NCBI RefSeq assembly: GCF_036365525.1
Contig: NC_090418.1
Location: 7,356,304 to 7,420,303, forward strand
From: Heterodontus francisci
Taxonomy: Eukaryota
DNA: 64,000 nucleotides
Reading direction: 5' to 3'
Each line of letters starts with the position of its first letter. Position 1 is the stretch's first letter. The notes beneath the pieces are model-generated. The model saw nothing but the letters and a program-made list of their open reading frames with translations. It had not been told where the DNA came from and did not search any database. The translations under genes and the position numbers were made by a program. Shown here one piece after another: positions 26,271-59,824 of the stretch.

Positions 26271-27857
26271 ATAACTTTGTAAACGTGAGCTCATACAAAC
26301 CCCTGCTGCCCCATGTGCTAACCCTCACCAAGTTCCGTTCACCCTGTGCTCGCCGACCCACGTTGGCTCCCGGTTAAGCAACACCTCCATTTTCTCATCC
26401 TGGTTTTCAAATCCCTCTTGGTCTTGGCCCCTCCCCATCTCTGCAACCCTCCTCCAGCCCCACAAACCTCCTCCAATTCTGGCCTCTTGAGCATCCCCCC
26501 GATTTCCATCGCTCCACCATTGGTGGCTGTGCCTTCAGCTGCCTGGGGCCCCAAGCTCTGGAATTCCCTCCCTAAACCTCTCCGCCCCTCTCCCCTCCTC
26601 CTTTAAGGCGCTCCTTAAAATCACTTTGAATCAAGCTTTTAGTCGCCTGTCCTAATGTCCCCTCATGTGACTTGGCGTCAAATTTTGTTTTATAACAGCA
26701 CCGTGAAGCTATGTCCAAAGGTTCTATATAAATGCAAGTTGTCATCAAAAGTTGCTCTAACTCCCTGAGATCAGCAGTTCCCAGTGTGGGGTAAGTTAGA
26801 GTCATGGAGTCAGTATGGCACACTTAGAGGCCATTCAGCCCATGCATGCCAGCTCTCTGTAGAGCAATCCAATCAGTCCCATTCCCCCCGCTCTATCCCC
26901 TTAGCCCTGCACGTTTATTTCCCTCACGTGCCCATCCAATTTCCTTTTGAAATCATCAATCGCCTCCGCTTCCACCACCCTCGTAGGCAGCGAGTTCCAG
27001 GTCATTACCACTCACTGTGTAAAAAAGTTCTTCCTCACATCCCCCCCTCATCTCTTGCCCAAAACCTTAAATCTGTGTCCCCTGGTCCTTGCACCATTAA
27101 GTATTGGGAACAGCTTTTCTTTACCAACCATTCTAACTTGTTGGTTTCTGGATTCTCAGTAAGTTGCAGTACTCATTACACACAAGCAGTGATAGTGGTG
27201 TAGTACTAATATCACTGAGTTCATAACCTTAAGGCCCAGGCTTGGGACCTGGGTTCAAATCCCACCATGGTTGAAAGTGGAGTTTAAATTCATCTTTTTG
27301 ATTAAAAATCTGGAATTAAAAGCAAGTCTCAGTACTGGTGCCACAAAACTGTCATAAAAACCCATCTGGTTCACTAATGTCCTTAAGGGAAGGAAATCTG
27401 CTGTCCTGACCTGGTCTGGCCTACATGTGACTCCAGATCCTCAGCGATATGGTTGACTCTTAACTGCCCCCTGAAATGCCCCTAGCAAGCCACTCAGTTG
27501 CCAAGGGCAATTAGGGGTGGGCAACAAATGCTGGCCTCGCCAGTGACGCCCACATCCCAAGGATGAATCGAAAAGATCTGAGAGCACCAGAGGAAGGGTG
27601 TTTTTATCTGGCCTTCTTTCACTCATGCTTGCCCTTATCTATTCGACCCCCAAGGCTCAGCTGAAGAAAACACCACTTATGTACAACATAACCTGGCAGA
27701 TCAGGCCTTATTTTGTGGTAATCTGGCATGATATGGCAAAAGGGAGAGGGGGAGGGGGAAGAAAGGGGGAGGGGCAGTGTCCACTTTCCCCCCCACTCCC
27801 CCCGTCAGGCAAAACCTGCGCGATAACGTGTTCTGTGCCAAGTGAATAAGTGTGAAA

Positions 27858-27863
27858 TTTATT
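27858..27863 (-). terminator. Candidate polyadenylation signal of gene 1
   Basis: AATAAA on the minus strand about 690 nt downstream of the stop at 28552. Confidence 0.35.
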
Positions 27864-28551
27864 TTTCAGGATTTCTTGTGTGCCGGGGCTGCTCCCACAT
27901 GGAAGCCTGGAGATTAGCTAACGCTCTGAGATATCCTCGCCCAATTAACTTCAACAAAAAAAAAAATTGCCTGTGCACATAGCGCAACGGGGAGGCTTCG
28001 CTTGGTGCTTGGGTTGTCAACTCGGTCGGGAAGCCTGGCTGTCGCGCCCTGCGTGGCTGTTGTCATATAGTCTGCACTGATATTCTTGTGGAGGAAGTCT
28101 GAGATGGTAAAAGCTCTGGCTTTCTGGGCACCACGTTAAACCGAGACACTGAGCCCATCCGTTATCTATTTGGGGACTGTTTGGAAGAGAATCACGGAAA
28201 CACAGAACGTTTAGAGCGGAGCAGGAGGCCATTCGGCCCATCGTGTCCTTACTGGCTGTCTGCAAAGAACAACTCAGCTAGTCCCGCTCCCCCAGTTTTT
28301 CCCTGAAGCCCTGCAGCTGTTTCCTCTTCAGATAATTAGCCGATTCCCAGCGGCGGAGATGCCCCACTATCCCTGCTGATGTTCCTCGTTTCCGAACAAC
28401 GCCGCCAAAAGAAAATTATCCGGTCCATTTTAATCCCAATTTTCTGCTTGGTGGGGTCTTGCTGTATGCAAAATTGGCTGCCTGTGTTTGGCAGGGTGAC
28501 GTTCTTCATTGCAAAGCGTTTCAAAATGAATTGAGGCTGCATTGAACAAAC

Positions 28552-28911
28552 TCAGGGTGTTTGTCTTTCTTTGCAGTTGGCACTGGAAACTATTTCCCCA
28601 CCTTTTCCTTGCTCGGAACTTTCAGATTGGGCACGGTCCTTAATGTCATCCAGCGGGAGGCTCGCTCCTAAAAACTGGAGCCGAACTTCAGTTTGTTCCT
28701 CCTTTTGTTTCCCGAAGCGAATTTGCGTGTACAAACTTTGATCGCACTCTGATTCGAGGCAAGAGATTTCTGAGTAGACCTGACTTCTGCATTCTGCTGG
28801 GGGTTGAGCTGGCGCCAGTCTCTCCACTGGCACTGTGATCTCATTGTACAACACCATACCTGACCACATCGCCTCCTCGTTGGCGGCTTGGCATCTGTTC
28901 ACCCTGAGGAA
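28552..28911 (-). CDS. Gene 1 (CD28-family-like receptor) last exon: cytoplasmic tail with VLYNEI, QVYSEI, SLYTQI
   Basis: Phase-0 acceptor ...TTTAAC...CTCAG|TTC CTC AGG GTG; open 119 codons to TGA; three YxxI motifs. Confidence 0.75.
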   Translation of the reverse strand, partial: FLRVNRCQAANEEAMWSGMVLYNEITVPVERLAPAQPPAECRSQVYSEISCLESECDQSLYTQIRFGKQKEEQTEVRLQFLGASLPLDDIKDRAQSESSEQGKGGEIVSSANCKERQTP

Positions 28912-29199
28912 CTGAGCAGATCACGCAGATGTTAAATGGTCAATCGCGCCCCGAGGTCTGAGCGGGGTAGTCCAATCACGCAGCAGGAGAGCGCTAACAC
29001 TTGGCATTGGCACAAAGAATTGGCTGGTGAGCAAATCACTGCCAGTTTTGAGGCATTGGAAATGTCCATGAACAGGATGGCACAACACCCAATGTGTTAA
29101 TTCAAACCGTCACCTACCCGCTGATATAATAGATTGATGGGGCACCTACCTTGAGTTGTTACAGTCCCTCTGTCCCTTTCTCTCTGTCTGCCTACCTAT

Positions 29200-29580
29200 A
29201 CCTGTCCTGGGAGTGTTTACTCTGTATCTAACCCCCTTTTTTTTCCTTTTTTTTTGCTGCAATCAACACTCAGCACCTCCAATCAAGCAGCAGCTAACCC
29301 CATGCTGTACCTACCCTGGGAGTGTAGAGGGAGCTTTACTCTGTATCTAACCCTGTTTTTTTTTCTACAGAAATAAACAAAACTCAAATTAAAATGCCAT
29401 TCTCGGCGTAGACAATGCACTCCAGTTCCTGCGGTGCCCACCGGTCACGGAAGGCCTCAAGTGTACCGGCTGACACCGCATGCTCCTTCTCCAGGGACGC
29501 CCGGGCGCGAACGTAACCGCTGAAGAGGGGAGTATCTAACCCTGTGCTGTACCTGCCCTGGGAGTGTTTGATGGTGACGG
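29200..29580. repeat. Degenerate units of 70-bp satellite (ACTCTGTATCTAACCC...) containing retroinsertions
   Basis: Same unit as 30886-31157 and 61285-61545. Confidence 0.8.
29356..29531 (-). mobile_element. Tx1-clade LINE 3' end with 13-bp TSD
   Basis: Translates PLFSGYVRARASLEKEHAVSAGTLEAFRDRWAPQELECIVYAENGILI*; poly(A) tail; flanked by GTATCTAACCCTG at 29343-29355 and 29532-29544. Confidence 0.75.
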
Positions 29581-29697
29581 TGAAAATTGGGCCAGAACGT
29601 GGGGGTGAGATTGATCAGAACTGGACACGTTTCTCAAGGCAAAAAAGCCCTTCATTTGTTCCTGAATCATCCTCTGTAAGTTATAAGACACACTTGC

Positions 29698-29762
29698 CTT
29701 GTCCGATGGTAGGGCATAATCCTCGGCTTCTCGTCCAGCTTCCTGTGATTCTGCTCTGAATA
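29698..29762 (-). CDS. Gene 1 cytoplasmic exon (V)FRAESQEAGREAEDYALPSDK
   Basis: Acceptor TTTCTTGCAG| (phase 1); donor AAG|GCAAGT (GC-AG, phase 0), in frame with the last exon. Confidence 0.6.
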
Positions 29763-30735
29763 CTGCAAGAAATGCCCAAACGTCAGATAAAGAGGAATGA
29801 ACAGAAGGGAGCAGGAAACAGCCCTGAAAACAAAAGTCCCGCACGAATTGAACCTCTCCCAAATCTTCCCAAACTCAGTGAAAGGCTGGAAAGAAGGGGA
29901 GGCAATAAATCAGAAAGCATAGCCTTGGCGATAATGGAACAAGAGGAGGCCATTCAGCCCTTGAAACCTGTTCTATCATTCAATTAGATCACAGCTGATC
30001 TGTAGATGCCTTAAAAAGCCCAGTTACGAGGAAGTGCAGACAGTGACCATTGAAATGTTGAGATGGACAAGTATTTGCCAGAGCACAGATCTGCACTGTT
30101 GCATTGCTGAGATGCCAGTCCCCTGGGGTCTGGGGTCAAAATTAGCGACAACGCTTGGCGTGAGGTCAGGACCTGGCTGAAGCACGGCAGAACGTTAGCT
30201 GTATCATGAGGGGGGGGTAGCTCTCGTGCCCCTCCAAGTCAGAATGTTGAGGTGTGCCGTCCCAGTTGGTGGGGGGGCTCACGATCACAATCTCGGCTGA
30301 TAGGCCAGTGCAGTGCCATACTGCCGGAGGTGCCGTCTTTCGGGTGAGACGTTAAATCGAACCCTCTGGGATGGAGGTCAAAGACCTCATGGCTGCTGCT
30401 TCAAAGCAAACTGGGGGCTGTTCTCCCCGATGCCCGGGCCAACGTTCCAACCGGTACCCCCAAAAGCAGATTGGCTGATCACTGACTCTTTGTGGGATCT
30501 TGCTGTGCTGATTCTTTGCAGCAGGAAGACACGCATCAGATTGGGCAGAGAACGGGTCCAAGCTGAGATCTCCAGCTGAAAACTTTGGACCAATCGTGTG
30601 AAACGGAAGTTTTTGAGCTGGCCACCCATGATACATCACACCCGATTTTCCCACGTGGCACTGCCCCATGGGACACCCAAAGTCAAAACAGAGCCCAAGT
30701 ACACAGAACCGCCAGGACACACAGGCTGGACTCAC

Positions 30736-30810
30736 CAATGATCGATCTCGCCAACCACTGCCCCATCAGGGAGCAATGCAGTATTCTCAATCTGCCCCCG
30801 CCCAGGACGG
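30736..30810 (-). CDS. Gene 1 optional cytoplasmic exon AVLGGGRLRILHCSLMGQWLARSII
   Basis: Strong donor TTG|GTGAGT; phase 1-1; two in-frame acceptors (30810 or 30849). Confidence 0.4.
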
Positions 30811-30885
30811 CTATTGTGGAACATGAGAAATGCCACAGGGTGTGATCTTCTAGGGTTGGAAAAGAGCCACATAACCGGGCATTAA

Positions 30886-31157
30886 CTCTGTGTCTAACCC
30901 TGTCCTGTATCTGTCCTGGGAGTGTTTGATGGGGGACAGTGTAGAGGGAGCTTTACTCTGTATCTAACCCCGTGCTGTACCTGTCCTGGGAGTGTTTGAT
31001 GGGGGACAGTGTAGAGGGAGCTTTACTCTGTATCTAACCCCGTGCTGTACCTGTCCTGGGAGTGTTTGATGGGGGACAGTGTAGAGGGAGCTTTACTCTG
31101 TATCTAACCCCGTGCTGTACCTGTCCTGAGAGTGTCTGATGGGGACAGTGTAGAGAA
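30886..31157. repeat. 70-bp tandem satellite, about 4 copies
   Basis: TTTACTCTG recurs at 30952, 31022 and 31092. Confidence 0.92.
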
Positions 31158-31368
31158 TTACGTTATCTCATCAATGGACAGTCTCAGGAGCTAGAACTTT
31201 TTTTTCTCATTTCTTTCCCATGGGTCCTGAGGTCAATTGCCAAACAATGGCTGAAGTGAGAGAAATCGACTGAGCCCAGACCAGGAATGGGCAGTGCACA
31301 TTCACATTCTCCTTTGTGTCTTTATAATGTGACACTTGTACAATCATTTATTAACAGGTTATACGCAC

Positions 31369-31491
31369 CAGTCAGTCTGCTGCCTTTAACCAGGAGGCAT
31401 ATTATACACAACACGCACAGGAGGATCCCAGGGACCAACAGAGCCGGCAGCGGCCAATACAGATTCCTATAAAGATCAGGTGATCTTTCAT
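31369..31491 (-). CDS. Gene 1 transmembrane exon DERSPDLYRNLYWPLPALLVPGILLCVLCIICLLVKGSRLT
   Basis: Acceptor CTCTTTTTCAG|, donor CTG|GTGCGT, 123 nt, phase 1-1; uncharged hydrophobic segment. Confidence 0.85.
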
Positions 31492-31624
31492 CTGAAAAAG
31501 AGGAAGAATCATTACGTCAAATTCACTTCACTGAGAAATGTTTCACTGTCCCTTGTGCTTCAACCACCGTCCTGAATTGTCTAATCCAACTGGAATTTTC
31601 AATCTGTAGATCATGCCCACGGCT

Positions 31625-33987
31625 GTTACAAAAATTTCTAAATTCACTTGTAACAGCCCTTCAAAACACTCCCACAGGGGATGCTGAGACCAAGTGGGCC
31701 CACATCAGAGACGCCATCTATGACTCAGCAATGACCACCTATGGCAAACGTGCGAAGAGAAATGCAGACTGGTTTCAATCTCATAATGAAGAGCTGGAAC
31801 CTGTCATAGCTGCTAAGCGCATTGCACTGTTGAACTACAAGAAAGCCCCCAGCGATTTAACATCCGCAGCACTTAAAGCAGCCAGAAGTACTGCACAAAG
31901 AACAGCTAGGCGTTGCGCAAACGACTACTGGCAACACCTATGCAGTCATATTCAGCTGGCCTCAGACACCGGAAACATCAGAGGAATGTATGATGGCATG
32001 AAGAGAGCTCTTGGACCAACCATCAAGAAGATCGCACCCCTCAAATCTAAATCGGGGGACATAATCACTGACCAACGCAAACAAATGGACCGCTGGGTTG
32101 AGCACTACCTAGAACTGTACTCCAGGGAGAATGCTGTCACTGAGACTGCCCTCAATGCAGCCCAGCCTCTACCAGTCATGGATGAGCTGGACGTACAGCC
32201 AACCAAATCGGAACTCAGTGATGCCATTGATTCTCTAGCCAGCGGAAAAGCCCCTGGGAAGGACAGCATTACCCCTGAAATAATCAAGAGTGCCAAGCCT
32301 GCTATACTCTCAGCACTACATGAACTGCTATGCCTGTGCTGGGACGAGGGAGCAGTACCCCAGGACATGCGCGATGCCAATATCATCACCCTCTATAAAA
32401 ACAAAGGTGACCGCGGTGACTGCAACAACTACCGTGGAATCTCCCTGCTCAGCATAGTGGGGAAAGTCTTTGCTCGAGTCGCTCTGAACAGGCTCCAGAA
32501 GCTGGCCGAGCGCGTCTACCCTGAGGCACAGTGTGGCTTTCGTGCAGAGAGATCGACCATTGACATGCTGTTCTCCCTTCGTCAGATACAGGAGAAATGC
32601 CGTGAACAACAGATGCCCCTCTACATTGCTTTCATTGATCTCACCAAAGCCTTTGACCTCGTCAGCAGACGTGGTCTCTTCAGACTACTAGAAAAGATTG
32701 GATGTCCACCAAAGCTACTAAGTATCATCACCTCATTCCATGACAATATGAAAGGCACAATTCAACATGGTGGCTCCTCATCAGAGCCCTTTCCTATCCT
32801 GAGTGGTGTGAAACAGGGCTGTGTTCTCGCACCCACACTTTTTGGGATTTTCTTCTCCCTGCTGCTTTCACATGCGTTCAAATCCTCTGAAGAAGGAATT
32901 TTCCTCCACACAAGATCAGGGGGCAGGTTGTTCAACCTTGCCCGTCTAAGAGCGAAGTCCAAAGTACGGAAAGTACGGAACTCCTCTTTGCTGACGATGC
33001 TGCTTTAACATCTCACACTGAAGAGTGCCTGCAGAGTCTCATCGGCAGGTTTGCGGCTGCCTGCAATGAATTTGGCCTAACCATCAGCCTCAAGAAAACG
33101 AACATCATGGGGCAGGACGTCAGAAATGCTCCATCCATCAATATTGGCGACCACACTCTGGAAGTGGTTCAAGAGTTCACCTACCTAGGCTCAACTATCA
33201 CCAGTAACCTGTCTCTAGATGCAGAAATCAACAAGCGCATGGGTAAGGCTTCCACTGCTATGTCCAGACTGGCCAAGAGAGTGTGGGAAAATGGCGCACT
33301 GACACGGAACACAAAAGTCCGAGTGTATCAGGCCTGTGTCCTCAGTACCTTGCTCTACGGCAGCAAGGCCTGGACAACGTATGCCAGCCAAGAGCGACGT
33401 CTCAATTCATTCCATCTTCGCTGCCTCCGGAGAATACTTGGCATCAGGTGGCAGGACTATATCTCCAACACAGAAGTCCTTGAAGCGGCCAACACCCCCA
33501 GCTTATACACACTACTGAGTCAGCGGCGCTTGAGATGGCTAGGCCATGTGAGCCGCATGGAAGATGGCAGGATCCCCAAAGACACATTGTACAGCGAGCT
33601 CGCCACTGGTATCAGACCCACCGGCCGTCCATGTCTCCGTTATAAAGACGTCTGCAAACGCGACATGAAATCGTGTGACATTGATCACAAGTCGTGGGAG
33701 TCAGTTGCCAGCATTTGCCAGAGCTGGCGGGCATCCATAAAGACAGGGCTAAATTGTGGCGAGTCGAAGAGACTTAGTAGTTGGCAGGAAAAAAGACAGA
33801 GGCGCAAGGGGAGAGCCAACTGTGCAACAGCCCCGACAAACAAATTTCTCTGCAGCACCTGTGGAAGAGCCTGTCACTCCAGAATTGGCCTTTATAGCCA
33901 CTCCAGGCGCTGCTTCACAAACCAGTGACCACCTCCAGGCGCGTATCCATTGTCTCTCGAGATAAGGAGGCCCAAAAGAAAAGAAGA
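31625..33987 (+). mobile_element. 5'-truncated RTE-clade LINE in intron 2 of gene 1 (antisense)
   Basis: NYRGISLLS, QCGFRAERS, FIDLTKAFD, GVKQGCVLAP, LLFADD, C-terminal CxxC..HxxxC finger; one evident frameshift near 32970; (AAAG)-rich tail. Confidence 0.93.
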
Positions 33988-34734
33988 GATCATGTTGAAG
34001 GACGAGGGGGGAAAGGAAAGCCTGTCACACTTCCTGTTTGTGCCACATCCCCTCAAGTCCCCCCCCCCCCCCCCCCCCACCGTCCTCCATCATGGCCTTC
34101 AGCTGTGGCCCAGTGGATAGCTCGCCAAACTCGAACGCAAAATCCAGTCTGACGCTCCCAGTGCAGTACCGAGGGAGTGCTGCACTGTCAGCCGTGCTGT
34201 CTTTCAGAACAGACTTTAAACGAGGCTCTCCCTGGTGTCCTAGGCTGACACCTCTCCCTCAACCAACATCAGTGCAAACATGTCGCCTGGTCATTTACCT
34301 CACTGCTGTTTGTGGGATCTTGCTGTGCGAGCATTGGCTGCTGTATCTACTACAGTTCAAATGAAGAGTTTTCATTGGCTGTACAGGGGCTATGGGACAT
34401 CGCGAGGTGGTAAATGATGCTTTATTGACTCACGGAATGGTTACCACTCAGAGGGCGGCCTGTCAGGGCTGTGCTGGCTCTCTGTAAGAGCAACTCAGCT
34501 AAATTGAATTGCATAGCGCAGAAGGAGGCCATTTGGCCCCTCTTTCCCCATATCCCTCCCCTTCAAGCATTTACCCATTTCCCCCTTGACAGCCGCAACT
34601 GAATCCTTTCCCTCCGCCCTATCAGGCAGTGCCTTCCAAATCCAGACCGCTCAGCCTCCTTCCAGATTCCCTTCTGTCCTGTCTTTCTTCCCCAACTCTT
34701 GTTTGTTTATAAAATTACGGAGCAGCAGGATTAC

Positions 34735-35100
34735 CTGGTGTGACGATCATAAGGATTGTTCCATTACCCTTTCCGTGTTTGATTGGAGTTGGTCTTTCTA
34801 CCTGCAGGTGACAGTAATAAGTCCCATTGTCCCCTAGCTGAATACTCCTGATGTGTAACGTAGAGTGTTGAGATTCCCAATTGACACGGATGCTAAATCT
34901 GCCATCTGCACCATCTGAATTATAATGTTTTGAATTGTTGATGCTACGGGTACAGAGTGTGGCATTTCCCTTTACCCATTCGAGGAAAGCATCTGTTATG
35001 TTGCCTGAGGCATTGAAACTACAGGTTGCAGTCACATTTTCCCCGAGCCTGACGTTGAGATATGAGGGTGATTGTGAAACCAAGATTTTCATCTGTGCAC
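34735..35100 (-). CDS. Gene 1 Ig V-set exon (CD28/TMIGD2/NKp30-like, germline VJ-type)
   Basis: Acceptor GCTTTTCAG|, donor CAG|GTAATC, 366 nt, phase 1-1; VSQSP, B-strand Cys, LEW, RF, DNGTYYC, VERPTP loop, GKGNGT G-strand; 7 N-glycosylation sequons. Confidence 0.92.
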
Positions 35101-35129
35101 CTGAAAAGCAAATCCAAAATTTACGGCAC

Positions 35130-35600
35130 AGAAGGAGACCAATCTGCCCTTCAATCAACGAAAAGAGCCGTCCGGCCTATTCCCACTTACCAGCTCTCGG
35201 TCCGTAGCCTTGTAGCTTACTGCATTCTAAGTATTGTTTAAGTGCGATGAGGGTTTCTGCCTCTACCATCCTCTCAGGCAATGAATTTCAGATCTCCACC
35301 ACCCTCAAAAGTTTCCCCTCAATTTCCCTCTAAATTCTCTCCCAATTACATTGAATCGATGCCCTCTGGTTTATTTGACCTCACGACTAAGGGAAATGGA
35401 TCTTTCCGATCCACTCTCTCTCGGCCCCTCATAATTTAATACACCTCAATTAAATCTCCCCTCAGCCTCCTCCATGCTAAAGAAAACAACTCCAGCCTAT
35501 CCAATCTTTCCTCGTGACTAAAATTCTCCAGTCCTGATAACATCCTGATAAAGTTCCTCTGTACCCTCTCCAGTGCAATCACAACCTTCCTGTAATGCCA
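35130..35600 (-). mobile_element. Degraded CR1 3' fragment
   Basis: Similar to 3835-4400. Confidence 0.75.
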
Positions 35601-36084
35601 GCTGGTGAGATTGTTGCCGATTCCGATCTCACGCTGTTGAGAACAGTGGATAGATTTTCAACCTGGCACCTGGGGCATCGAAACTGCCTTGTGCATGAGC
35701 AGCTAGTTGTGGGAAAGGTCAAGGGTGATAGAGTACAAACAGGAAGAAGCAATCCTCTACGCAGAGAGCCTTGGTCAGACCCCATCTCGACTAACTACAT
35801 CCAGTTCTGAGCTCTGCACTTGGATGTTGTAATCAGCAAAAGCCTTGTAGAAAGCTGCCCACAAACATCTAGTGATCTCTGCAGTGTGGTTTTCCCCTTT
35901 ACCAATGGCGCTTTAAGTCTGGCGCCAAGTCAGGAGACTGCGTTGGCGTGCAGCAGCAGTGCTGCCAGCAAGCAGGGTAAGCCACACAAATGCCAGGCAG
36001 CGACCATCTCCAACAAACGAGACTTGAACCATCTCCCCTTGACATTCAATGGCATTACCATCACTGAATTGCCCACGATCATTA

Positions 36085-36820
36085 TAAAATTAAGGACACA
36101 ATTCTAAAGGGGGTGCAGGAGCAGAGGGACCTGGGTTTATATGTGAATAAGTCATTGAAGGTGGCAGGACAGGTTGAGAGAGCGGTTAATAAATCATACA
36201 GTATCCTGGGCTTTATTAATAGGGGCACAGAGTACAAGAGCAAGGAAGTTACGTTGAACTTGTATAAGACACTAGTTTGGCCTCAGCTGGAGTATTGCAT
36301 CCATTTCTGGGCGCCGTTCTTTAGGAAAGACGTGAGGGCATTGGAGAAGCTACAGAAAATATTCATGAGAATGGTTCCAGGGATGAAGAATTTCAGTTAT
36401 GAAGATAGATTGGAGAAGTTAGGACTGTTTTCCTTGGAGAAGAGAAGGCTGAGAGGTGATTTGATCGAGATATTCAAATCATGAGGGGTCTGGACAGAGT
36501 AGATAGGGAGAAACTGTTACCACCCGTGAAAGGATTGAGAACGATGGGGCACAGATTTAAAGTAATGGGTAAGAGAAGCAAAAGTGACATGAGGAAAAAC
36601 TTTTTCACACAGCAAGTGGTTAAGGTGTGGAAAGCGTTGTCTGAGAGTGCGGTGGAGGCAGGTTCAACTGAAGCATTTAAAAGGGAATTAGACTGTTTCC
36701 TGGAAAGGAAGAATGTGCAGGGTTACGGGGAAAAGGCACTAGGCGAATTGTTCATTTGGGGAGCCGGTGCAGATACGATGGGCTGAATGGCATCCTTATG
36801 CACTGAAACAATTCTGTGAT
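36085..36820 (+). mobile_element. CR1 3' fragment nested in an older LINE fragment (35985-36080 and 36820-37110)
   Basis: QEQRDLG..PQLEYC..; host LINE reads KCQAATISNKR ... AGQRLGILRR..YKAQARSVMEYS. Confidence 0.85.
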
Positions 36821-37629
36821 CAACATCCATTGACCAGAAAATTAACAGGACCAGCCATGTAAATACAGTGGCTACGAGAGCAGGTCAGAGGCTTGGAATC
36901 CTGCGGCGTGTAACCCACCTCCTGACTCCCCAAAGCCTGTCCACCATCTACAAGGCACAAGCCAGGAGTGTGATGGAATACTCTCCACTTGCCTGGATGG
37001 GTGCAGCTCCAACAACACTCAAGATGCTTGACACGTCCAGGACAAAGCAGCCTGCTTGATTGACACCCCACCCACCACCTTAAACATTCACGCCCTCCAC
37101 CACTGGCACACAGCGTGCTCGCTGGCCTACATTGGCTCCCGGTAAAGCAACAGCACACGGGGGATCTGCTCCAACATAGGTAAAATACTGGCGCTGTTAC
37201 AAAATAGCCCAAAGAGGGGTGTTAATTGTACATATTCGCTGCCCCCGTCGAGGGTTGACCCTCATCCCAACTCCCTCCAACCCCAGGAAAGTCCCCGAGA
37301 GGTGCGAACGAGTCAGGGAGCTGTCCCAAGGCAGCTTCCCCACCACCCCCCACCTTATTTTCCCCACTCCGCTGCCAGGAAAAGACAGCCCCTTGTGTTT
37401 CAGGAATATTTCAAACCCCAAACGATCCCCGACATCCTCAAACTTCAACAGAACAACTGAGGCAGCTTTCAACAACGCCTGTGACACCCTGGTTAGAAAG
37501 GAAATGCTTTGTAGACAAATACTGCTTGAAGCATAGTCACTGTTGCAACGTAGGAAACACTGGCAGCCACTTTGTGCATCGCAAGATCCCATAATCAGCA
37601 ACATGGTAACAGCCAGGTAATCTCTTCTT

Positions 37630-39950
37630 TAGGAGCAGAAATAGGCCATTCGGCCCCTCAAGCCAGCCCCGCCATTCAATAAGATCATGGCTGATCTGCC
37701 CTAGACCTCAACTCCTCTTTCGTGCCAGCTCCTCATTGCCCTCAACTCCCCAACATTTCAAAAATCTATCTACCTCCTCTTTAAATACATTCAGTGATCT
37801 AGCCTCCACAACTCTCTGGGGTAGAGAATTCCACTACCCTCTGAGAGAAGAGGTTCCCTCGCATCTCAGTTTTAAACGAGTGTCCCCTTATTCTGTAACT
37901 ATGTCCCTTAGTTCGAGATTCCCCCACTTGTGGAAACATCTTCTCAACATCTACCCTGTCAAGCCCCCTCAGAATCTTGTACGTTTCAATAAGATCACCC
38001 CTCATTCTTCTAAACTCTAATGAATAAAGGCCTAACCTGTTTAGCCGTTCTTGATAAGTCAACCTCTTCATCCCAGGAATCAGCCGAGTGAATCTCTTTT
38101 GAACTGCCTCCAATGCTAATATATCCTTTCTTAAATACGGGGACCAAAACTGTACACAGTACTCCAGGTGCGGCCTCACCAACACCCTGTACAGTTTTAA
38201 CAAGACTTCCCTATTTTTAAACTCCAACCCACTCGTAATAAAGGCCAAAATTCCATTTACCTTCTTAATTACTTGCTGCACCTGCATGCTAACTTTTTGT
38301 GTTTCATGCACAAGAAAACCCAGATCCCTCTGTGCTGCACTTTTTTGAAATCTCTCTCCATTTAAATAATAGTCTGCCTTTTGATTCTTCCTATCGAAGT
38401 GCATGACTTCACACCTTCCTACATTAAACTCCATCTGCCAAGTTTTTTCCCACTCACTCAACCTATCTATATCCCCTTGCAGATTCCTTATATCCTCATC
38501 ACAACATACACACCCACCTATTATTGTTTCAGCAGCAAATTTGGATATATCACACTCTGCCCCCTCCTCCAAGTCATTAATATAGGTAGTAAGTAATTGA
38601 GGCCCTAGGACTGATCCTTGTGGCACTCAACTAGTTATGTCTTTCCAACCTGAAAAAGACCCAGTAATCCCGACTCTCTGTCTTCTGTGAGTTAACCAAT
38701 CCTTAATCCACGCTAATACATTACTCCCAATACAGTGAGCTCCTATCTTGTGCAATAATCTTTTATGTGGCACCTTATCGAATGCCTTCTGGAAATCCAA
38801 ATACACTACATCTACCGGTTCCCCTTTATCAGCTCTGCTTGTTATATCCTCAAAGAACTCTAGTAAATTTGTCAAACACGATTTCTCTTTCACAAAACCA
38901 TGTTGACTCTGTTTGATTGCGTTAAGCTTTTCTAAATGTCCTGCTATTTCTTCCTTAATAATGGACTCTAGCATTTTCCCAATAACCGATGTTAGGCTGA
39001 CTGGCCTATAGTTTCCTGCTTTTTGTCTCCCACCCTTCTTGAACAGGGGCATTACATTAGCGGTTTTCCAATCCGCTGGGATCCTCCTGCAATCCAGTGA
39101 GCTCTGGAATATTTCAACCAATGTCTCCGCTATCTCTGCAGCCACTTCCTTTAAAACCCTTGGATGTAGGCCATCAGCTCCTGGCGACTTGTCTGCATTT
39201 AGTCCCATTAGTTTGTCAAATACTTTGTCCCTCGTGATAAATACTGTGACAAGATCTTTCCTCCCATTAGCTCCTTGCTTATCTGATATCTGTGGGATGT
39301 TTATAGTGTCCTCCACCATGAAGACTAATGTAAAATATTGGTTTACATTATCTGAATTCCCCTGTTCCCCGTTCTCAATTCTCCAGTCGCATCCTCCAAG
39401 GGTCCCACGCTCACTTTAGCTACTCTCTTTCTTTTTATATACCTGTCGAACCTCTTGCTGTTGTTTTTTATATTTCTTGCCAGTTTACTTTCATACTCAA
39501 TTTTCTCCCTCCTTATTAACGTTTTAGTCATCTGTTGCTGGTTCCTAAAAAAATTCCCAATCCACTAGCTTTCGCTGTTTCGTATGCCTTAGTTTTTGAT
39601 TGGATACTCTCCTTAACAGCCTTTGTTAACCATGGGTGGTTCATCCTTCTCATCGAGTCCTTCTTTTTGATAAATCTTTGCGTTATGAAATATCTGCTTA
39701 AGTGTCTGCCACTGCTCATCCACTGACCTCATTCTATTTTCCCAGCCCGCTTTCGACAACTCTTTCTTCATCCCTCTGTAATTGCCCTTGTTTAAGTTGA
39801 GGACACTGGTTTGAGACCCGAGTTGCTCGCCCTCAAACTCAATTTGAAATTCTACCATGTTGTGATCGCTACTCCCTAGAGGATCCTTAACTACAATATC
39901 TCTTCTTAATCCTACCTCATTACACATTACTAGATCTAAAATAGCCTGCA
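37630..39950 (-). mobile_element. CR1 LINE ORF2 fragment in intron 1 of gene 1
   Basis: SDHNMVEF, NYRPVSLTS, QHGFVKEKSCLTNL, PQGSVLGP, RPHLEYCVQFWSP. Confidence 0.93.
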
Positions 39951-40055
39951 GTTGGTGAATTAAAGCAAAAACTGTCTCGTCTTACAGATCGGGACGAGTG
40001 AGACTGGTGAGGGGGTTGAAAGCAGTGGATCGAGAATCTCAGATTGCGTTCCTAC

Positions 40056-40122
40056 CTTGAAAATTGAGGCAAAAGCAGGTGAACAGGGCGCTGAACGTGT
40101 TCAGGGTGGCTGCACTCCTCAT
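40056..40122 (-). CDS. Gene 1 exon 1: signal peptide MRSAATLNTFSALFTCFCLNFQ(G)
   Basis: GAAATG start, hydrophobic leader and phase-1 donor AAG|GTAGGA matching the V exon. Confidence 0.75.
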
Positions 40123-49693: not shown

Positions 49694-52600
49694 CCGTGCA
49701 CTGTTCCGGTCTCCATAACACACTTGGAGCACCGTGCACAGTTCCAGTCTCCATATCACACTTGGAGCACCGTGCACAGTTCCAGTCTTCATATCACACT
49801 TGGAGCACTGTGCACAGTTCCAGTCTCCATATCACACTTGGAGCACCATGCACAGTTCCAGTCTCCATATCACACTTGGAGCACCATGCACAGCTCCAGT
49901 CTCCATATCACACTTGGAGCACCGTGCACAGTTCCGGACTCCATAATACACTTGGAGCACCATGCACAGTTCCAGTCTCCATAACACACTTGGAGCACCA
50001 TGCACAGTTCCAGTCTCCATATCACACTTGGAGCACCGTGCACTGTTCCGGTCTCCATAACACACTTGGAGCACCGTGCACAGTTCCAGTCTTCATATCA
50101 CACTTGGAGCACCATGCACAGTTCCAGTCTCCATATCACACTTGGAGCACCGTGCACTGTTCCGGTCTCCATAACACACTTGGAGCACCGTGCACAGTTC
50201 CAGTCTCCATATCACACTTGGAGCACCGTGCACAGTTCCAGTCTTCATATCACACTTGGAGCACTGTGCACAGTTCCAGTCTCCATATCACACTTGGAGC
50301 ACCATGCACAGTTCCAGTCTCCATATCACACTTGGAGCACCATGCACAGCTCCAGTCTCCATATCACACTTGGAGCACCGTGCACAGTTCCGGACTCCAT
50401 AATACACTTGGAGCACCATGCACAGTTCCAGTCTCCATAACACACTTGGAGCACCATGCACAGTTCCAGTCTCCATATCACACTTGGAGCACCGTGCACT
50501 GTTCCGGTCTCCATAACACACTTGGAGCACCGTGCACAGTTCCAGTCTTCATATCACACTTGGAGCACCATGCACAGTTCCAGTCTCCATATCACACTTG
50601 GAGCACCGTGCACTGTTCCGGTCTCCATAACACACTTGGAGCACCGTGCACAGTTCCAGTCTCCATATCACACTTGGAGCACCGTGCACTGTTCCGGTCT
50701 CCATAACACACTTGGAGCACCGTGCACAGTTCCAGTCTTCATATCACACTTGGAGCACCGTGTACAGTTCCGGTCTCCATATCACACTTGGAGCACCATG
50801 CACAGCTCCAGTCTCCATATCACACTTGGAGCACCGTGCACTGTTCCGGTCTCCATATCACACTTGGAGCACCATGCACAGTTCCAGTCTCCATATCACA
50901 CTTGGAGCACCATGCACAGCTCCAGTCTCCATATCACACTTGGAGCACCGTGCACAGTTCCGGACTCCATAATACACTTGGAGCACCATGCACAGTTCCA
51001 GTCTCCATATCACACTTGGAGCACCGTGCACAGTTCCAGTCTCCATATCATACTTGGAGCACCATGTACAGTTCCAGTCTCCATATCATACTTGGAGCAC
51101 CATGCACAGTTCCAGTCTCCATATCACACTTGGAGCACCATGCACAGTTCCAGTCTCCATATCACACTTGGAGCACCATGCACAGCTCCAGTCTCCATAT
51201 CACACTTGGAGCACCGTGCACAGTTCCGGACTCCATAATACACTTGGAGCACCATGCACAGTTCCAGTCTCCATATCACACTTGGAGCACCGTGCACAGT
51301 TCCAGTCTCCATATCATACTTGGAGCACCATGTACAGTTCCAGTCTCCATATCATACTTGGAGCACCGTGCACAGTTCCGGACTCCATAATACACTTTGA
51401 GCACCGTGCACAGTTCCAGTCTCCATATCACACTTGGAGCACCATGCACAGTTCCAGTCTCCATATCACACTTGGAGCACCGTGCACTGTTCCGGTCTCC
51501 ATAACACACTTGGAGCACCATGCACAGTTCCAGTCTCCATATCACACTTGGAGCACTGTGCACAGTTCCAGTCTCCATATCATACTTGGAGCACCATGCA
51601 CAGTTCCAGTCTCCATATCACACTTGGAGCACCATGCACAGCTCCAGTCTCCATATCACACTTGGAGCACCATGCACAGTTCCAGTCTCCATATCACACT
51701 TGGAGCACCATGCACAGCTCCAGTCTCCATATCACACTTGGAGCACCGTGCACAGTTCCGGACTCCATAATACACTTGGAGCACCATGCACAGTTCCAGT
51801 CTCCATATCACACTTGGAGCACCGTGCACAGTTCCAGTCTCCATATCATACTTGGAGCACCATGTACAGTTCCAGTCTCCATATCACACTTGGAGCACCG
51901 TGCACAGTTCCGGTCTCCATATCACACTTGGAGCACTGTGCACAGTTCCAGTCTCCATATCACACTTGGAGCACTGTGCACAGTTCCGGTCTCCATATCA
52001 CACTTGGAGCACCGTGCACAGTTCCGGTCTCCATATCACATTTGGAGCACTGTGCACAGTTCCAGTCTCCATATCACACTTGGAGCACTGTGCACAGTTC
52101 CGGTCTCCATATCACACTTGGAGCACCGTGCACAGTTCCAGTTTCCATATCACACTTGGAGCACCGTGCACAGTTCCAGTTTCCATATCACACTTGGAGC
52201 ACCGTGCACAGTTCCAGTTTCCATATCACACTTGGAGCACCGTGCACAGTTCCAGTCTCTATATCACACTTGGAGCACCGTGCACAGTTCCAGTCTCCAT
52301 ATCACACTTTGAGCACCGTGCACAGTTCCCTTCTCCATATCACACTTGGAGCACCGTGCACAGTTCCAGTTTCCATATCACACTTGGAGCACCGTGCACA
52401 GTTCCAGTCTCTATATCACACTTGGAGCACCGTGCACAGTTCCAGTCTCCATATCACACTTTGAGCACCGTGCACAGTTCCCTTCTCCATATCACACTTG
52501 GAGCACCGTGCACAGTTCCAGTTTCCATATCACACTTTGAGCACCGTGCACAGTTCCCTTCTCCATATCACACTTGGAGCACTGTGCACAGTTCCAGTCT

Positions 52601-54075
52601 CCATATCACACTTGGAGCACTGTGCACAGTTCCAGTCTCCATATCACACTTGGAGCACCGTGCACAGTTCCAGTCTCCATATCACACTTGGAGCACCGTG
52701 CACAGTTCCAGTCTCCATATCACACTTGGAGCACTGTGCACAGTTCCAGTCTCCATATCACACTTGGAGCACTGTGCACAGTTCCAGTCTCCATAACACA
52801 CTTGGAGCACCGTGCACAGTTCCCTTCTCCATATCACACTTGGAGCACCGTGCATAGTTCCAGTCTCCATATCACACTTGGAGCACCGTGCACAGTTCCC
52901 TTCTCCATATCACACTTGGAGCACTGTGCACAGTTCCAGTCTCCATATCACACTTGGAGCACCATGCACAGTTCCAGTCTCCATATCACACTTGGAGCAC
53001 TGTGCACAGTTCCGGACTCCATATCACACTTGGAGCACCATGCACAGTTCCAGTCTCCATATCACACTTGGAGCACCATGCACAGTTCCGATCTCCATAT
53101 CACACTTGGAGCACCGTGCACAGTTCCAGTCTCCATATCACACTTGGAGCACCGTGCACAGTTCCGATCTCCATATCACACTTGGAGCACTGTGTACAGT
53201 TCCGATCTCCATATCACATTTGGAGCACCGTGCACAGTTCCGGTCTCCATATCACACTTGGAGCACCGTGCACAGTTCCAGTTTCCATATCACACTTGGA
53301 GCACCGTGCACAGTTCCGATCTCCATATCACACTTGGAGCACCGTGCACAGTTCATGTCTCCATATCATACTTGGAGCACTGTGTACAGTTCCGATCTCC
53401 ATATCACATTTGGAGCACCGTGCACAGTTCCGGTCTCCATATCACACTTGGAGCACCGTGCACAGTTCCGGACTCCATATCACACTTGGAGCACTGTGTA
53501 CAGTTCCGATCTCCATATCACATTTGGAGCACCGTGCACAGTTCCGGACTCCATATCACACTTGGAGCACCGTGCACAGTTCCGATCTCCATATCACATT
53601 TGGAGCACCGTGCACAGTTCCGGTCTCCATATCACACTTGGAGCACCGTGCACAGTTCCGGACTCCATATCACACTTGGAGCACTGTGTACAGTTCCGAT
53701 CTCCATATCACATTTGGAGCACCGTGCACAGTTCCGGACTCCATATCACACTTGGAGCACCGTGCACAGTTCCGATCTCCATATCACACTTGGAGCACCG
53801 TGCACAGTTCCGGACTCCATATCACACTTGGAGTACTGTGTACAGTTCCAGTCTCCATATCACACTTGGAGCACCGTGCACAGTTCCAGTCTCCATATCA
53901 CACTTGGAGCACCGTGCACAGTTCCAGTCTCCATATCACACTTGGAGCACTGTGTACAGTTCCAGTCTCCATATCACACTTGGAGCACCGTGCACCCGGA
54001 CTCCACATCACACTTGGAGCACTGTGCACAGTTCCGATCTCCTATCACACTTGGAGCACCGTGCACAGTTCTGGT
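49694..54075. repeat. 38-bp minisatellite, about 115 copies, derived from CR1 ORF2
   Basis: Unit CACACTTGGAGCACCGTGCACAGTTCCAGTCTCCATAT; higher-order 456-bp and 266-bp periodicities visible in ORF offsets. Confidence 0.95.
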
Positions 54076-54179
54076 CCCAATATTACCATTGGAATGCTGT
54101 GCACTGGATAAGGTGATTCACAAGGATGATACCAGAACTGAGCGGTTCTAGAAACAATAATTCGGTACCAAATCAGTAG

Positions 54180-57146: not shown

Positions 57147-57308
57147 NNNNNNNNNNNNNNNNNNNNNNNNNNNNNNNNNNNNNNNNNNNNNNNNNNNNNN
57201 NNNNNNNNNNNNNNNNNNNNNNNNNNNNNNNNNNNNNNNNNNNNNNNNNNNNNNNNNNNNNNNNNNNNNNNNNNNNNNNNNNNNNNNNNNNNNNNNNNNN
57301 NNNNNNNN
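57147..57308. other. Assembly gap
   Basis: Run of N. Confidence 0.99.
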
Positions 57309-59248: not shown

Positions 59249-59824
59249 CTAGAAACGGGGGAAAACGACAGGGCATCATGGGCAGGTAGGCTCGGTGCAT
59301 CTGAAGGCAGTGCTAATAATCGGAGGCCATTCAGCCCCTCTGTGCCGGGTCTGTTAAAGAGCAGTCCAGTTAGTCCCACACCCCCACTCTCCTTATCCCT
59401 GCAAATTTTTATTTTTCCCATCAAATATTTATCCAATCCCCTTTTGAAAGCCCCGATTGAACCTGCCTCCAGCACACTCACAGGCAGCGCATTCCAGAGC
59501 CTAACTACTCGCTACACAAAGACATTTTTCCTCATGTCCCCCTCTGATTCTTTTACCTTAAATCGGTGCCCTCTGGTTATCGACGCTTCAGCCACTGAAA
59601 ACAGCTCCTCTCGGTCCACCCTGTCAAAACCCTTCAAGATTTTGAAGGCCACGATCAAACCTGCCCTTCACTTTCTAAGGAAAAGATCCCAGTTTTCCAA
59701 GCCTCTGCACGTCACTGAAATCTTTCACCTAGAAAGGCTTTGCGCTGCAGGCGAGCTCCGCGCTATGCCCCTTTAAGCGTCGGCATGGTAACAACATGTC
59801 CTGTGACCTTTTAAATCCCCTTAC

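What the first reader, a model, noticed from the sequence alone, without database searches (positions are those of the whole stretch)
28552..40122. CD28-type V domain coupled to a PD-1/Siglec-style triple-tyrosine tail
The V exon has a Pro-rich CDR3-like loop (VERPTP, compare MYPPPY of CD28/CTLA4) and a germline J-like G strand (GKGNGT). It also has an unpaired third Cys in C' and 7 N-glycan sequons. The TM has no charged residue (unlike NKp30) and three Cys. The tail carries VLYNEI and SLYTQI (ITIM consensus S/I/V/L-x-Y-x-x-I), QVYSEI (ITIM/ITSM-like) and EDYALP, and no YMNM/YVKM motif. I do not recognise this combination among human CD28-family members, so it may be a lineage-specific or ancestral inhibitory member.
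Basis: partly seen in the sequence, partly recalled or inferred. Interest (0 to 1): 0.78.

Follow-up and report, generated by a model that had tools for sequence, protein, structure and literature searches.

The report
Shark CTLA-4-like receptor with ITIM tail
This is a real, transcribed horn-shark gene, listed in the public annotation only as "uncharacterized", for a one-domain surface receptor whose binding loop resembles CTLA-4/CD28 and whose tail carries inhibitory tyrosine motifs that its only detectable relative, in whale shark, lacks.

Summary
Window 28552-40122 (minus strand) is a five-exon gene. Its exon translations equal RefSeq XP_067879962.1, an "uncharacterized protein" of horn shark, 326 aa. 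Spliced contigs from four runs of one sample join the TM exon, exon 4 and the last exon. The tail is therefore read in the frame holding VLYNEI, QVYSEI and SLYTQI.

As a whole, the V domain is closest to TCR V-alpha and Ig kappa V. Its F-G segment, however, ranks CTLA-4 and then CD28 first among solved chains, with PxP and GxGNGT at CTLA-4 spacing (E only 0.02-0.1).

The only detectable relative is a whale-shark uncharacterized protein (41% identity). It keeps the loop but has no ITIM. The tail exon has no true relative among 1.84 billion representatives.

Best reading: a fast-evolving, CD28/CTLA-4-like inhibitory receptor. It is a new member of a known kind and is not shown to be ancestral. 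Synteny, structure and other shark genomes could not be tested.

The scan noted this stretch once more (s1-872188) and similar ITIM receptors elsewhere in this genome.

The parts
40056..40122 (-). Leader exon, coding part. ATG at 40122; 22 codons plus 1 base; donor GT.
   Evidence: translation equals P0001 residues 1-22. The split codon GGT gives G23.
34735..35100 (-). V exon, phase 1-1. It encodes a 121-residue VJ-type IgV domain, P0001 residues 24-144.
   Evidence: Pfam V-set, E 3.6e-14; 7 sequons; Cys 49, 72 and 119; the best solved relatives are Ig kappa V and TCR V-alpha.
34757..34819 (-). F strand, FG loop and start of the G strand (YYC...ERPTP...GKGNGT). PxP sits at Cys+7 to Cys+9 and is followed by GxGNGT.
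   Evidence: gapless alignment to the CTLA-4 chains' ...C-x6-PPP-x3-GxGNGT..., best E 0.018; conserved in whale shark as IERPIP...GQGNGT.
31369..31491 (-). Exon for the stalk, the transmembrane span (residues 157-179, uncharged, Cys 170/173/176) and the KGSRLT stop-transfer.
   Evidence: the joint 29762/31369 is seen in contigs of 3 of 4 runs.
29698..29762 (-). Cytoplasmic exon 4 (65 nt), holding EDYALP at 29707-29724. Its donor is GC (AAG|GCAAGT).
   Evidence: the joint 28911/29698 is seen in 4 of 4 runs, and the skipped ends CT..GC on the + strand equal GC..AG on the - strand. One search agrees.
28552..28911 (-). Coding part of the last exon (119 codons plus stop TGA). VLYNEI lies at 28837-28854, QVYSEI at 28765-28782 and SLYTQI at 28720-28737.
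   Evidence: 100% match to P0001 residues 208-326.
27600..28551 (-). 3' untranslated region. It runs beyond 27600, the edge of the stretch I laid.
   Evidence: contigs are continuous from 28911 down to 27600. X2 record 7 has 95 more letters beyond that edge.

Best explanation
Shown:
- This is an intact, spliced, transcribed horn-shark gene (RefSeq XP_067879962.1, 'uncharacterized').
- It encodes a type I membrane protein: a leader, one heavily N-glycosylated VJ-type IgV domain, a short Cys-free stalk, an uncharged transmembrane span and a 147-residue tail.

Inferred:
- The V domain belongs to the CD28/CTLA-4 branch of one-V receptors. Its ligand-binding FG loop and G strand have the CTLA-4 layout, with PxP at Cys+7 to +9 followed by GxGNGT.
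- It probably binds a B7-type ligand. The B7-like gene about 17 kb upstream on the same strand is one candidate.
- After ligand binding, Src-family kinases would phosphorylate Y229 and Y268 (canonical ITIMs) and Y253 (ITIM-like). Y229 and Y253 lie 24 residues apart.
- SH2-domain phosphatases (SHP-1, SHP-2 or SHP-2L, all reported in sharks) would dock there and damp activating signals.
- So it would inhibit by PD-1-style tail signalling rather than only by CTLA-4-style ligand competition.
- The gene evolves fast. Only a whale-shark relative is detectable, and that relative lacks the tail motifs.
- The inhibitory tail therefore looks lineage-specific, not ancestral.
For: - Gene and frame: exon translations equal P0001. 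Spliced joints 28911/29698 appear in 4 of 4 runs and 29762/31369 in 3 of 4 runs. Depth is zero in the unique intron bins 30012-30279, 30548-30815 and 31218-31351 in all runs.
- Domain: Pfam V-set, E 3.6e-14.
- CTLA-4-type F-G segment: 19 of 36 PDB hits are CTLA-4 or CTLA-4-like and hold the first 18 places, CD28 gives 3 more, and NKp30 gives none. The whale-shark segment repeats this with 19 of 22.
- The motif description P-[P/L]-P followed by GxG for shark CD28/CTLA4-related genes, and E-I-P(-P-P) at the same spacing for CD28H, comes from Quiniou 2024 (sections 14-16).
- Atlas look-alikes of the whole protein are PDCD1 (0.96), CTLA-4-like (0.96), PD-1 (0.96) and CD28 (0.95). The structure rows are led by 'CTLA-4-like' at TM 0.84.
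- Whale-shark P0004 has a second V-domain Cys pair (74, 85). From recall, this is a CD28/CTLA-4/CD28H trait.
- Tail: 2 canonical ITIMs plus a third YxxI. Three YxxI occurred in 20 of 200000 shuffles.
- Sharks have SHP-1, SHP-2 and SHP-2L with conserved ITIM/ITSM-binding sites (abstract of Kondo 2025, PMC12151841, seen).
- The neighbouring B7-like V exon best matches CD276 at 5e-11, then butyrophilins and VTCN1.
Against: - Over the whole V domain, TCR V-alpha (2e-10) and Ig kappa V rank first, and no CD28-family chain is in the best 60.
- The CTLA-4 E-values are only 0.018-0.25. The many CTLA-4 rows are near-identical chains, so they amount to one hit. The two shark queries are orthologous, so they are not independent.
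- The loop is P-T-P (P-I-P in whale shark), not P-[P/L]-P. There is no stalk Cys, no YxxxxT in the TM span and no YxxM or YxNx tail motif.
- The ITIMs are absent from the only relative.
- The tail exon has no true relative among 1.84 billion representatives, so conservation gives no support for function.
- Synteny is untested.
- There is no binding or signalling data.
- Expression rests on contigs from one sample whose RNA nature is the tool's guess. I infer RNA from the splicing and the empty introns.
Confidence: 0.6

Rival explanations
1. It is an inhibitory member of the expanded shark NKp30 (NCR3) family of VJ-type one-V receptors, not a CD28-family gene. The CTLA-4-like loop would then be shared VJ ancestry or convergence.
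For: - It has a VJ-type V domain with a near-complete J motif.
- A B7-like gene is its neighbour. From recall, NKp30 and B7H6 are linked in frogs (Flajnik 2012, not held).
- From recall, human NKp30 shares short motifs with this domain around the B-strand Cys and in the G strand.
- Earlier notes of this scan describe many NKp30-like genes with ITIM tails in this genome (unchecked leads).
- Quiniou 2024 itself links the GxG of CD28-family members to VJ domains such as NKp30.
Against: - No NKp30 chain appears among the 36, 22 or 29 hits at E<=10 for the F-G and B-C segments.
- None appears among the best 60 for the whole domain.
- No NKp30-named cluster is shown by the Atlas.
- The Cys in C' and PxP at Cys+7 to +9 are not NKp30 traits (recall).
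- The TM span is uncharged.
- The paper that defines the shark family (Kinlein 2021) was not held, so its criteria could not be applied.
Confidence: 0.2
2. It is a lineage-specific one-V IgSF receptor derived from an antigen-receptor-like V gene, with no special kinship to CD28 or NKp30. On this view the loop resemblance is chance or convergence.
For: - The best whole-domain relatives are TCR V-alpha and Ig kappa V.
- The CTLA-4 E-values are not significant on their own.
- The word search found only 2 of 1131 candidates at E<=0.001, the protein itself and the whale-shark protein.
- The tail is unrelated to anything else.
Against: - The gapless 32-residue match puts Cys, PxP, GxGNGT and the closing V..P at CTLA-4 positions in both sharks.
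- CTLA-4 outranks tens of thousands of antibody chains for that segment.
- The Atlas features point the same way.
Confidence: 0.15
3. It is a decaying or functionless gene copy, transcribed but not used, whose tyrosine motifs are chance.
For: - The tail is not conserved in whale shark.
- Cys72 is unpaired where whale shark has a pair.
- The last intron has a non-canonical GC donor.
Against: - All five exons are open and the transcript is correctly spliced with a long 3' UTR.
- Three YxxI among 4 Tyr occurred in 20 of 200000 shuffles.
- GC-AG introns are a normal minority class (established knowledge).
Confidence: 0.05

Closest known systems
CTLA-4 (and CD28)
   Same: - One IgV domain, then TM span and tail.
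- The F strand, FG loop and G strand align without gaps over 32 residues. Cys, a Pro-x-Pro at the place of the PPP of MYPPPY, GxGNGT and the end of the domain all sit at the same positions.
- The whale-shark relative has a second Cys pair in the V domain. That this is a CD28-family trait is recalled.
   Different: - The loop is ERPTP, not MYPPPY.
- There is no stalk Cys for a covalent dimer, no YxxxxT in the TM span and no YVKM or YMNM.
- The tail is long and carries ITIMs.
- Whole-domain similarity to solved CTLA-4 or CD28 chains is below the best 60 hits.
PD-1
   Same: - Five-exon layout, one V domain and an uncharged TM span.
- The tail has two or more tyrosine motifs, with Y229 and Y253 spaced 24 residues apart (PD-1 Y223-Y248).
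- The third motif, SLYTQIRF, shares Y, I and F with the PD-1 consensus (T/V)EYATIx(F/Y).
- The Atlas puts PD-1 clusters among the nearest.
   Different: - The PD-1 CDR3 has no conserved Pro, while this gene has PxP.
- PD-1-typical residues are missing: Y after the C-strand Trp, and the sequon 7 residues before the F-strand Cys. This gene has W-V and a sequon 5 residues before.
- The motifs (I/V)(D/E)YG(E/V)L(D/E)F and TxYxx(V/I) are not met.
- Shark PD-1 is found as a plain BLASTP top hit of PD-1, which is unlike this isolated gene.
CD28H-like genes CD28HL2 and CD28HL3 (Quiniou et al. 2024)
   Same: - The layout YxC-polar-xxx-E-x-P-x-P has the same spacing as E-I-P-[P/A/L/V]-[P/F/L] of CD28HL2.
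- CD28HL2 is reported only in sharks among cartilaginous fish and has no conserved tail motif, as seen here.
- CD28HL3 pairs a Pro at Cys+7 with an ITIM/ITSM tail.
   Different: - This gene has Arg where those families have Ile or an aliphatic residue.
- It has no YxNx near the C terminus and no VTYxxV.
- CD28HL3 was not detected in cartilaginous fish.
- Synteny is untested (slbp/tacc3/tmem129 for CD28HL2; prkab1b/pla2g1b/tmem233 for CD28HL3).
- The accession lists are in supplements I could not see.
Shark NKp30 (NCR3) family
   Same: - A non-rearranging VJ-type single-exon V domain.
- Activating and inhibitory forms occur in sharks (recalled from Kinlein 2021; earlier scan notes).
- A B7-like gene lies nearby.
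   Different: - No NKp30 chain reached any of my PDB lists.
- This gene has a Cys in C' and a PxP loop.
- The family's own criteria could not be read.

Membership tests
CD28 family (criteria of Quiniou et al. 2024, Methods) | IgV - TM - cytoplasmic domain structure with a single V domain | tested here: met
   Pfam V-set is the only domain type found. The TM span is residues 157-179 and the tail is 147 residues long. tblastn found no second V exon of this type in the window.
CD28 family (criteria of Quiniou et al. 2024) | Conserved motif in the CDR3 neighbourhood: P-[P/L]-P or PPP at Cys+7 to +9 followed by GxG, or E-I-P for the CD28H group | tested here: inconclusive
   Spacing and the GxG are met, and the loop reads E-R-P-T-P (whale shark E-R-P-I-P). 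The middle residue and the Ile do not fit the printed motifs. CTLA-4 is the best solved match for the segment, but at E 0.018-0.1.
CD28 family (criteria of Quiniou et al. 2024) | Conserved cytoplasmic tyrosine motif of a named member (YxxM, YxNx, EYEDM, Y[E/D]SF, or ITIM/ITSM) | tested here: not met
   The tail tyrosines are DYAL, LYNE, VYSE and LYTQ. None is YxxM, YxNx, YEDM or Y[E/D]SF. Two ITIMs are present, but they are absent from the whale-shark relative, so they are not conserved.
CD28 family (criteria of Quiniou et al. 2024) | Location beside conserved synteny markers | not testable with these tools
No earlier scan note mentions TACC3 or SLBP.
CD28 / CTLA-4 proper | YxxxxT dimerisation motif in the TM span (Quiniou 2024) and a stalk Cys for a covalent dimer (recalled) | tested here: not met
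   There is no Cys between residues 120 and 169, and neither Tyr near the TM span (Y152, Y156) has Thr at +5.
PD-1 | PD-1-typical ectodomain residues and the tail motifs (I/V)(D/E)YG(E/V)L(D/E)F and (T/V)EYATIx(F/Y) (Kondo 2025); CDR3 without conserved Pro | tested here: not met
   The C-strand reads W64-V65, not W-Y. The sequon lies 5, not 7, residues before the F-strand Cys. VLYNEITV and SLYTQIRF match the two motifs at 3 of 8 positions each. PxP is present in the CDR3.
CD28HL3 | YxCxxxxx[I,A,V,L]P plus [I,V]xYxxL (X)n VTYxxV | tested here: not met
   This gene has Arg at the aliphatic position, VLYNEI with Ile for Leu, and no VTYxxV. The family is reported as not detected in cartilaginous fish.
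NKp30 / NCR3 | Closest similarity to NKp30 V domains; charged TM residue in the activating forms (recalled); MHC linkage (recalled) | tested here: not met
   No NKp30 chain appears. The TM span is uncharged. MHC linkage is not testable here, and the defining shark paper was not held.
ITIM-bearing inhibitory receptors (functional class) | At least one (S/I/V/L)xYxx(I/V/L) in the cytoplasmic tail of a membrane receptor without a charged TM residue | tested here: met
   VLYNEI and SLYTQI fit, and QVYSEI fits only at Y and +3. The frame is proven by spliced contigs. Phosphatase binding was not tested.

The most novel reading that the evidence does not exclude
The gene is a so far unlisted member of the CD28 family. 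It could be a tenth member, or the cartilaginous-fish counterpart of CD28HL3, which Quiniou et al. 2024 could not find. It would combine a CTLA-4-type ligand-binding loop with PD-1-type ITIM signalling. It would also sit beside the gene for its own B7-like ligand, as a linked receptor-ligand checkpoint pair of the kind proposed for the early evolution of co-stimulation.
Probability: 0.2. Interest if true: 0.65.

Novelty: new member of a known kind. Interest (0 to 1): 0.4.

Why it matters
The CD28 family was recently extended to nine members across jawed vertebrates. In that work the shark CD28/CTLA-4-like genes could not be matched to CD28, CTLA-4 or ICOS, and the ITIM-bearing CD28HL3 was not detected in cartilaginous fish (PMC11599192).

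A transcribed shark gene that joins a CTLA-4-type loop to ITIMs shows that loop type and signalling type were recombined freely in this family. Its tail differs completely between two shark orders. It gives a concrete candidate for testing three things:
- whether sharks run a CTLA-4-like receptor through phosphatase recruitment;
- whether the neighbouring B7-like gene is its ligand;
- how fast checkpoint tails turn over.

If it proves to be only one more lineage-specific one-V receptor, it is routine annotation.

Tried and rejected
1. Alternative tail frame (GEQMPS...VVQ*) and my own first guesses for the exon 4 donor (GT at 29694, 29692 or 29690) and acceptor (28903). All were rejected by the joints.

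2. Word searches with single exons. The last-exon ORF and the V exon both gave nothing. The tool only sees proteins of 0.55-1.75 times the query length, so these blanks say little.

3. Relatives of the tail. The big search gave 3 hits. P0002 (3093 aa, snakehead fish) and P0003 (6495 aa) are long repetitive proteins. Their scores are sums of about 40 repeats of 0-4.6 bits each, so I rejected them as spurious.

4. Homology of the last exon with the whale-shark C-terminus. The best local score was 25, reached by 2092 of 5000 shuffles. No homology is shown.

5. Paralogous exons in the window. tblastn with the 5 exon translations found only the exons themselves.

6. NKp30 reading. This was my first guess. 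No tool result supported it, so I kept it as a rival only.

7. PD-1 and CD28HL3 readings. The motif tests were not met (see the membership table).

8. PDB searches with the C'-D segment gave 0 hits. The B-C segment gave 29 hits, all antibody chains. Neither was informative.

9. Pfam at E<=10 on P0001 and P0004 gave only general Ig families and no V-set_2.

10. Papers.
- Kinlein 2021, Flajnik 2012 and Ohta & Flajnik 2015 were not held. What I say of them is recalled.
- Searches for the accessions and for shark CD28-family ITIM receptors found no description of this gene.
- The supplements of PMC11599192, which hold its accession lists and alignments, are closed. They may list this gene or its orthologues under CD28HL2 or another name.

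Full report
WHAT IS THERE. The finding lies on the minus strand. Reading the sequence gave five exons:
- leader, 40122-40056;
- V exon, 35100-34735;
- stalk/TM exon, 31491-31369;
- a 65-nt cytoplasmic exon, 29762-29698;
- a last exon from 28911, with stop at 28554-28552.

A script checked each exon translation separately against database protein P0001. All five are found in order, at residues 1-22, 24-144, 146-185, 187-207 and 208-326. The three split codons give the residues between them. The introns are 4955, 3243, 1606 and 786 nt long, with ends GT-AG, GT-AG, GT-AG and GC-AG. I did not build or search a joined model of my own. The full-length sequence I used later is the one the database returned.

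IS IT TRANSCRIBED, AND IN WHICH FRAME. One search for sequencing runs with 28400-31600 listed four runs of one sample and one study, kept as contigs and labelled 'RNA?' as a guess. Laid on 27600-31600, they show the following:
- The joint 28911/29698 appears in 4 of 4 runs. The skipped ends CT..GC on the + strand equal GC..AG on the gene's strand.
- The joint 29762/31369 appears in 3 of 4 runs (GT..AG).
- Depth is zero in all four runs in the unique intron bins 30012-30279, 30548-30815 and 31218-31351. The exons and the stretch 27600-28911 are covered at 3-35.

That pattern is RNA, not genomic DNA. The junction reads ...SDK|FLRVNRC..., which puts the three YxxI motifs in frame.

The longest contig (X2, 2039 letters) has 441 more letters upstream of the TM exon. 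That length fits the V exon (366) plus about 78 letters of the leader exon. I could not lay that part, so the leader-V-TM joints rest on canonical splice sites and on the RefSeq model.

The contigs differ from the window at 28380 (3 runs) and at 31461-31462 (2 runs). The second difference changes Leu155 to Trp in the stalk and is probably an allele.

- There are seven sequons, all in the V exon.
- V-domain Cys are at 49, 72 and 119.
- The TM span 157-179 has no charged residue and has Cys 170, 173 and 176.
- The tail tyrosines are Y201 (EDYALP), Y229 (VLYNEI), Y253 (QVYSEI) and Y268 (SLYTQI). There is no YxxM.
- Two motifs fit the ITIM rule. QVYSEI does not, because of Gln at -2.
- Three YxxI among four tyrosines arose in 20 of 200000 shuffles of the 147-residue tail. 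Two or more canonical ITIMs arose in 1779 of 200000.

WHO ELSE HAS IT.
- The big search with the 119-residue last exon against 1.84 billion representatives gave three hits at E<=0.001.
- One is P0001 itself (100%). It is XP_067879962.1, 'uncharacterized protein [Heterodontus francisci]', on a 19.48-Mb contig.
- The other two are giant repetitive proteins whose scores are sums of about 40 repeats of at most 4.6 bits. I count them as spurious.
- The word search with P0001 scored 1131 candidates and kept 2: P0001 and P0004. P0004 is a 266-residue 'uncharacterized protein LOC125487770' of whale shark, 41% identical over 242 residues.
- Identity by region: V domain 54 of 121, stalk/TM 17 of 41, exon 4 10 of 22, last exon 12 of 119.
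- The whale-shark protein has no ITIM. Its tail tyrosines are in SVYIRS and NNYVPV, and it has Cys for the Tyr of EDYALP.
- Its C-terminal part is no more like the horn-shark last exon than shuffles are (2092 of 5000).
- Earlier word searches with single exons were blank, for reasons of length.

WHICH KIND OF V DOMAIN.
- Pfam gives only general families, with V-set at 3.6e-14.
- Against solved structures, the whole domain and the two-shark profile are closest to Ig kappa V and TCR V-alpha (best single-domain E about 1e-10 to 2e-10). No CD28-family or NKp30 chain is in the best 60. It is therefore an antigen-receptor-like VJ domain, with a near-complete J motif.
- The part that makes the ligand-binding face in CD28-family receptors tells more. 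With the 33-residue F-G segment, 36 chains pass E<=10. Of these, 19 are CTLA-4 or an unnamed chain with the same loop and hold the first 18 places, 3 are CD28 and 14 are antibody chains.
- That alignment is gapless over 32 residues. Cys, P-x-P (on the PPP of the CTLA-4 loop), GxGNGT and the last V..P coincide.
- The whale-shark segment gives 19 of 22.
- These E-values (0.018-0.25) are weak and the CTLA-4 rows are near-identical, so this is one suggestive hit seen in two orthologues.
- The B-C segment finds only antibodies (29 of 29) and the C'-D segment finds nothing.
- The Atlas, which gives leads only, puts PD-1, CTLA-4-like and CD28 clusters nearest by features (0.92-0.97) and 'CTLA-4-like' first by structure.
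- The whale-shark V domain has a second Cys pair (74, 85) where horn shark has only Cys72. From recall, a second disulfide in this place is typical of CTLA-4, CD28 and CD28H.

COMPARISON WITH PRINT. I read Quiniou et al. 2024 (PMC11599192: outline, sections 3, 4, 14, 15, 16, 21, 22 and 23, and passages).
- It defines nine CD28-family members by domain structure, motifs near CDR3 and in the tail, and synteny.
- Shark CD28/CTLA4-related genes have P-[P/L]-P followed by GxG.
- CD28H has E-I-P (E-I-P-P-P in cartilaginous fish).
- CD28HL2 has E-I-P-[P/A/L/V]-[P/F/L]. Among cartilaginous fish it occurs only in sharks, and it has no conserved tail motif.
- CD28HL3 joins a Pro at the same place to an ITIM/ITSM tail but was not detected in cartilaginous fish.
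- The present gene has E-R-P-T-P plus GxG at the same spacing, which fits none of the printed motifs to the letter. Its tail fits none of the named tail motifs. Synteny could not be tested.

I also read Kondo et al. 2025 (PMC12151841: outline with abstract, and sections 9-11).
- It gives PD-1-specific residues and tail consensus, which this gene does not meet.
- Its abstract reports that sharks have SHP-2 and a SHP-2-like gene and analyses the binding of PD-1 to SHP-2, so the presumed effectors exist.

Kinlein 2021 on shark NCR3 genes, Flajnik 2012 and Ohta & Flajnik 2015 were not held. The NKp30 rival therefore rests on recall and on unchecked scan notes. No paper in the library holds the two accessions. 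The CD28HL names occur in one paper only.

SURROUNDINGS.
- No second exon of this gene's type lies in the window.
- About 17 kb upstream on the same strand is a B7-like V exon (59811-60173). Its best solved relatives are CD276 (5e-11), butyrophilins and VTCN1.
- Scan notes, which I did not check, place a three-V inhibitory receptor gene just before the window start and a true CD28H-like V domain (IEIPPP) on another piece of the genome.

HOW IT MOST LIKELY WORKS.
- Shown: it is an expressed type I membrane protein with one glycosylated V domain, an uncharged anchor and two canonical ITIMs plus one ITIM-like motif.
- Inferred: it binds a B7-type ligand through a CTLA-4-like face. Its tail tyrosines are then phosphorylated and recruit SH2 phosphatases. 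The Y229-Y253 spacing of 24 residues resembles PD-1's 25. The result would be inhibition.
- The absence of the motifs in whale shark argues that this signalling mode is a lineage-specific acquisition or was lost there.

VERDICT. This is a new, unnamed member of a known kind, the one-V co-inhibitory receptors of the CD28 family in the broad sense. It is already present in RefSeq and is not shown to be ancestral. The scan noted the same stretch in another finding (s1-872188, report withheld) and many similar ITIM receptors elsewhere in this genome.

Noticed in passing
window 59811-60173 (-): A B7-family V exon lies about 17 kb upstream of the receptor gene on the same strand. Its best solved relatives are CD276 (5e-11), butyrophilin 3A and VTCN1. 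It is a possible linked ligand gene.
   Followed up: partly
window 28912-29697 (-): The last intron of the receptor gene is a GC-AG intron with donor AAG|GCAAGT. It is used in 4 of 4 runs.
   Followed up: yes
window 31461-31462: Contigs of runs X2 and X3 read two adjacent other letters here, changing Leu155 to Trp in the stalk. The X1 contig ends exactly at 31460, as at a heterozygous site.
   Followed up: partly
window 29208-29609 and 30816-31217: Two intron stretches collect summed contig depths of 10^4 to nearly 10^6, with many joints to each other. This is the mark of a highly repeated, transcribed short element.
   Followed up: no
window 49696-54151 (+): A long tandem array gives many overlapping open frames built from one repeated unit (HITLGAPCTVPVSISHLEH...).
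   Followed up: no
window 31731-33928 (+) and 37799-39319 (-): Long open frames of 425, 273, 275 and 230 codons lie inside introns 2 and 1. By eye they look like reverse-transcriptase parts of retrotransposons. I ran no family scan on them.
   Followed up: no
P0004 (whale shark) residues 74 and 85; window 34952-34954 (Cys72 codon): The whale-shark relative has a second Cys pair in the V domain where the horn-shark protein keeps only one Cys. Horn-shark Cys72 is therefore probably free or makes an interchain bond.
   Followed up: partly
window 57147-57308: A run of 162 N lies between the receptor gene and the B7-like gene. I left it untouched.
   Followed up: no
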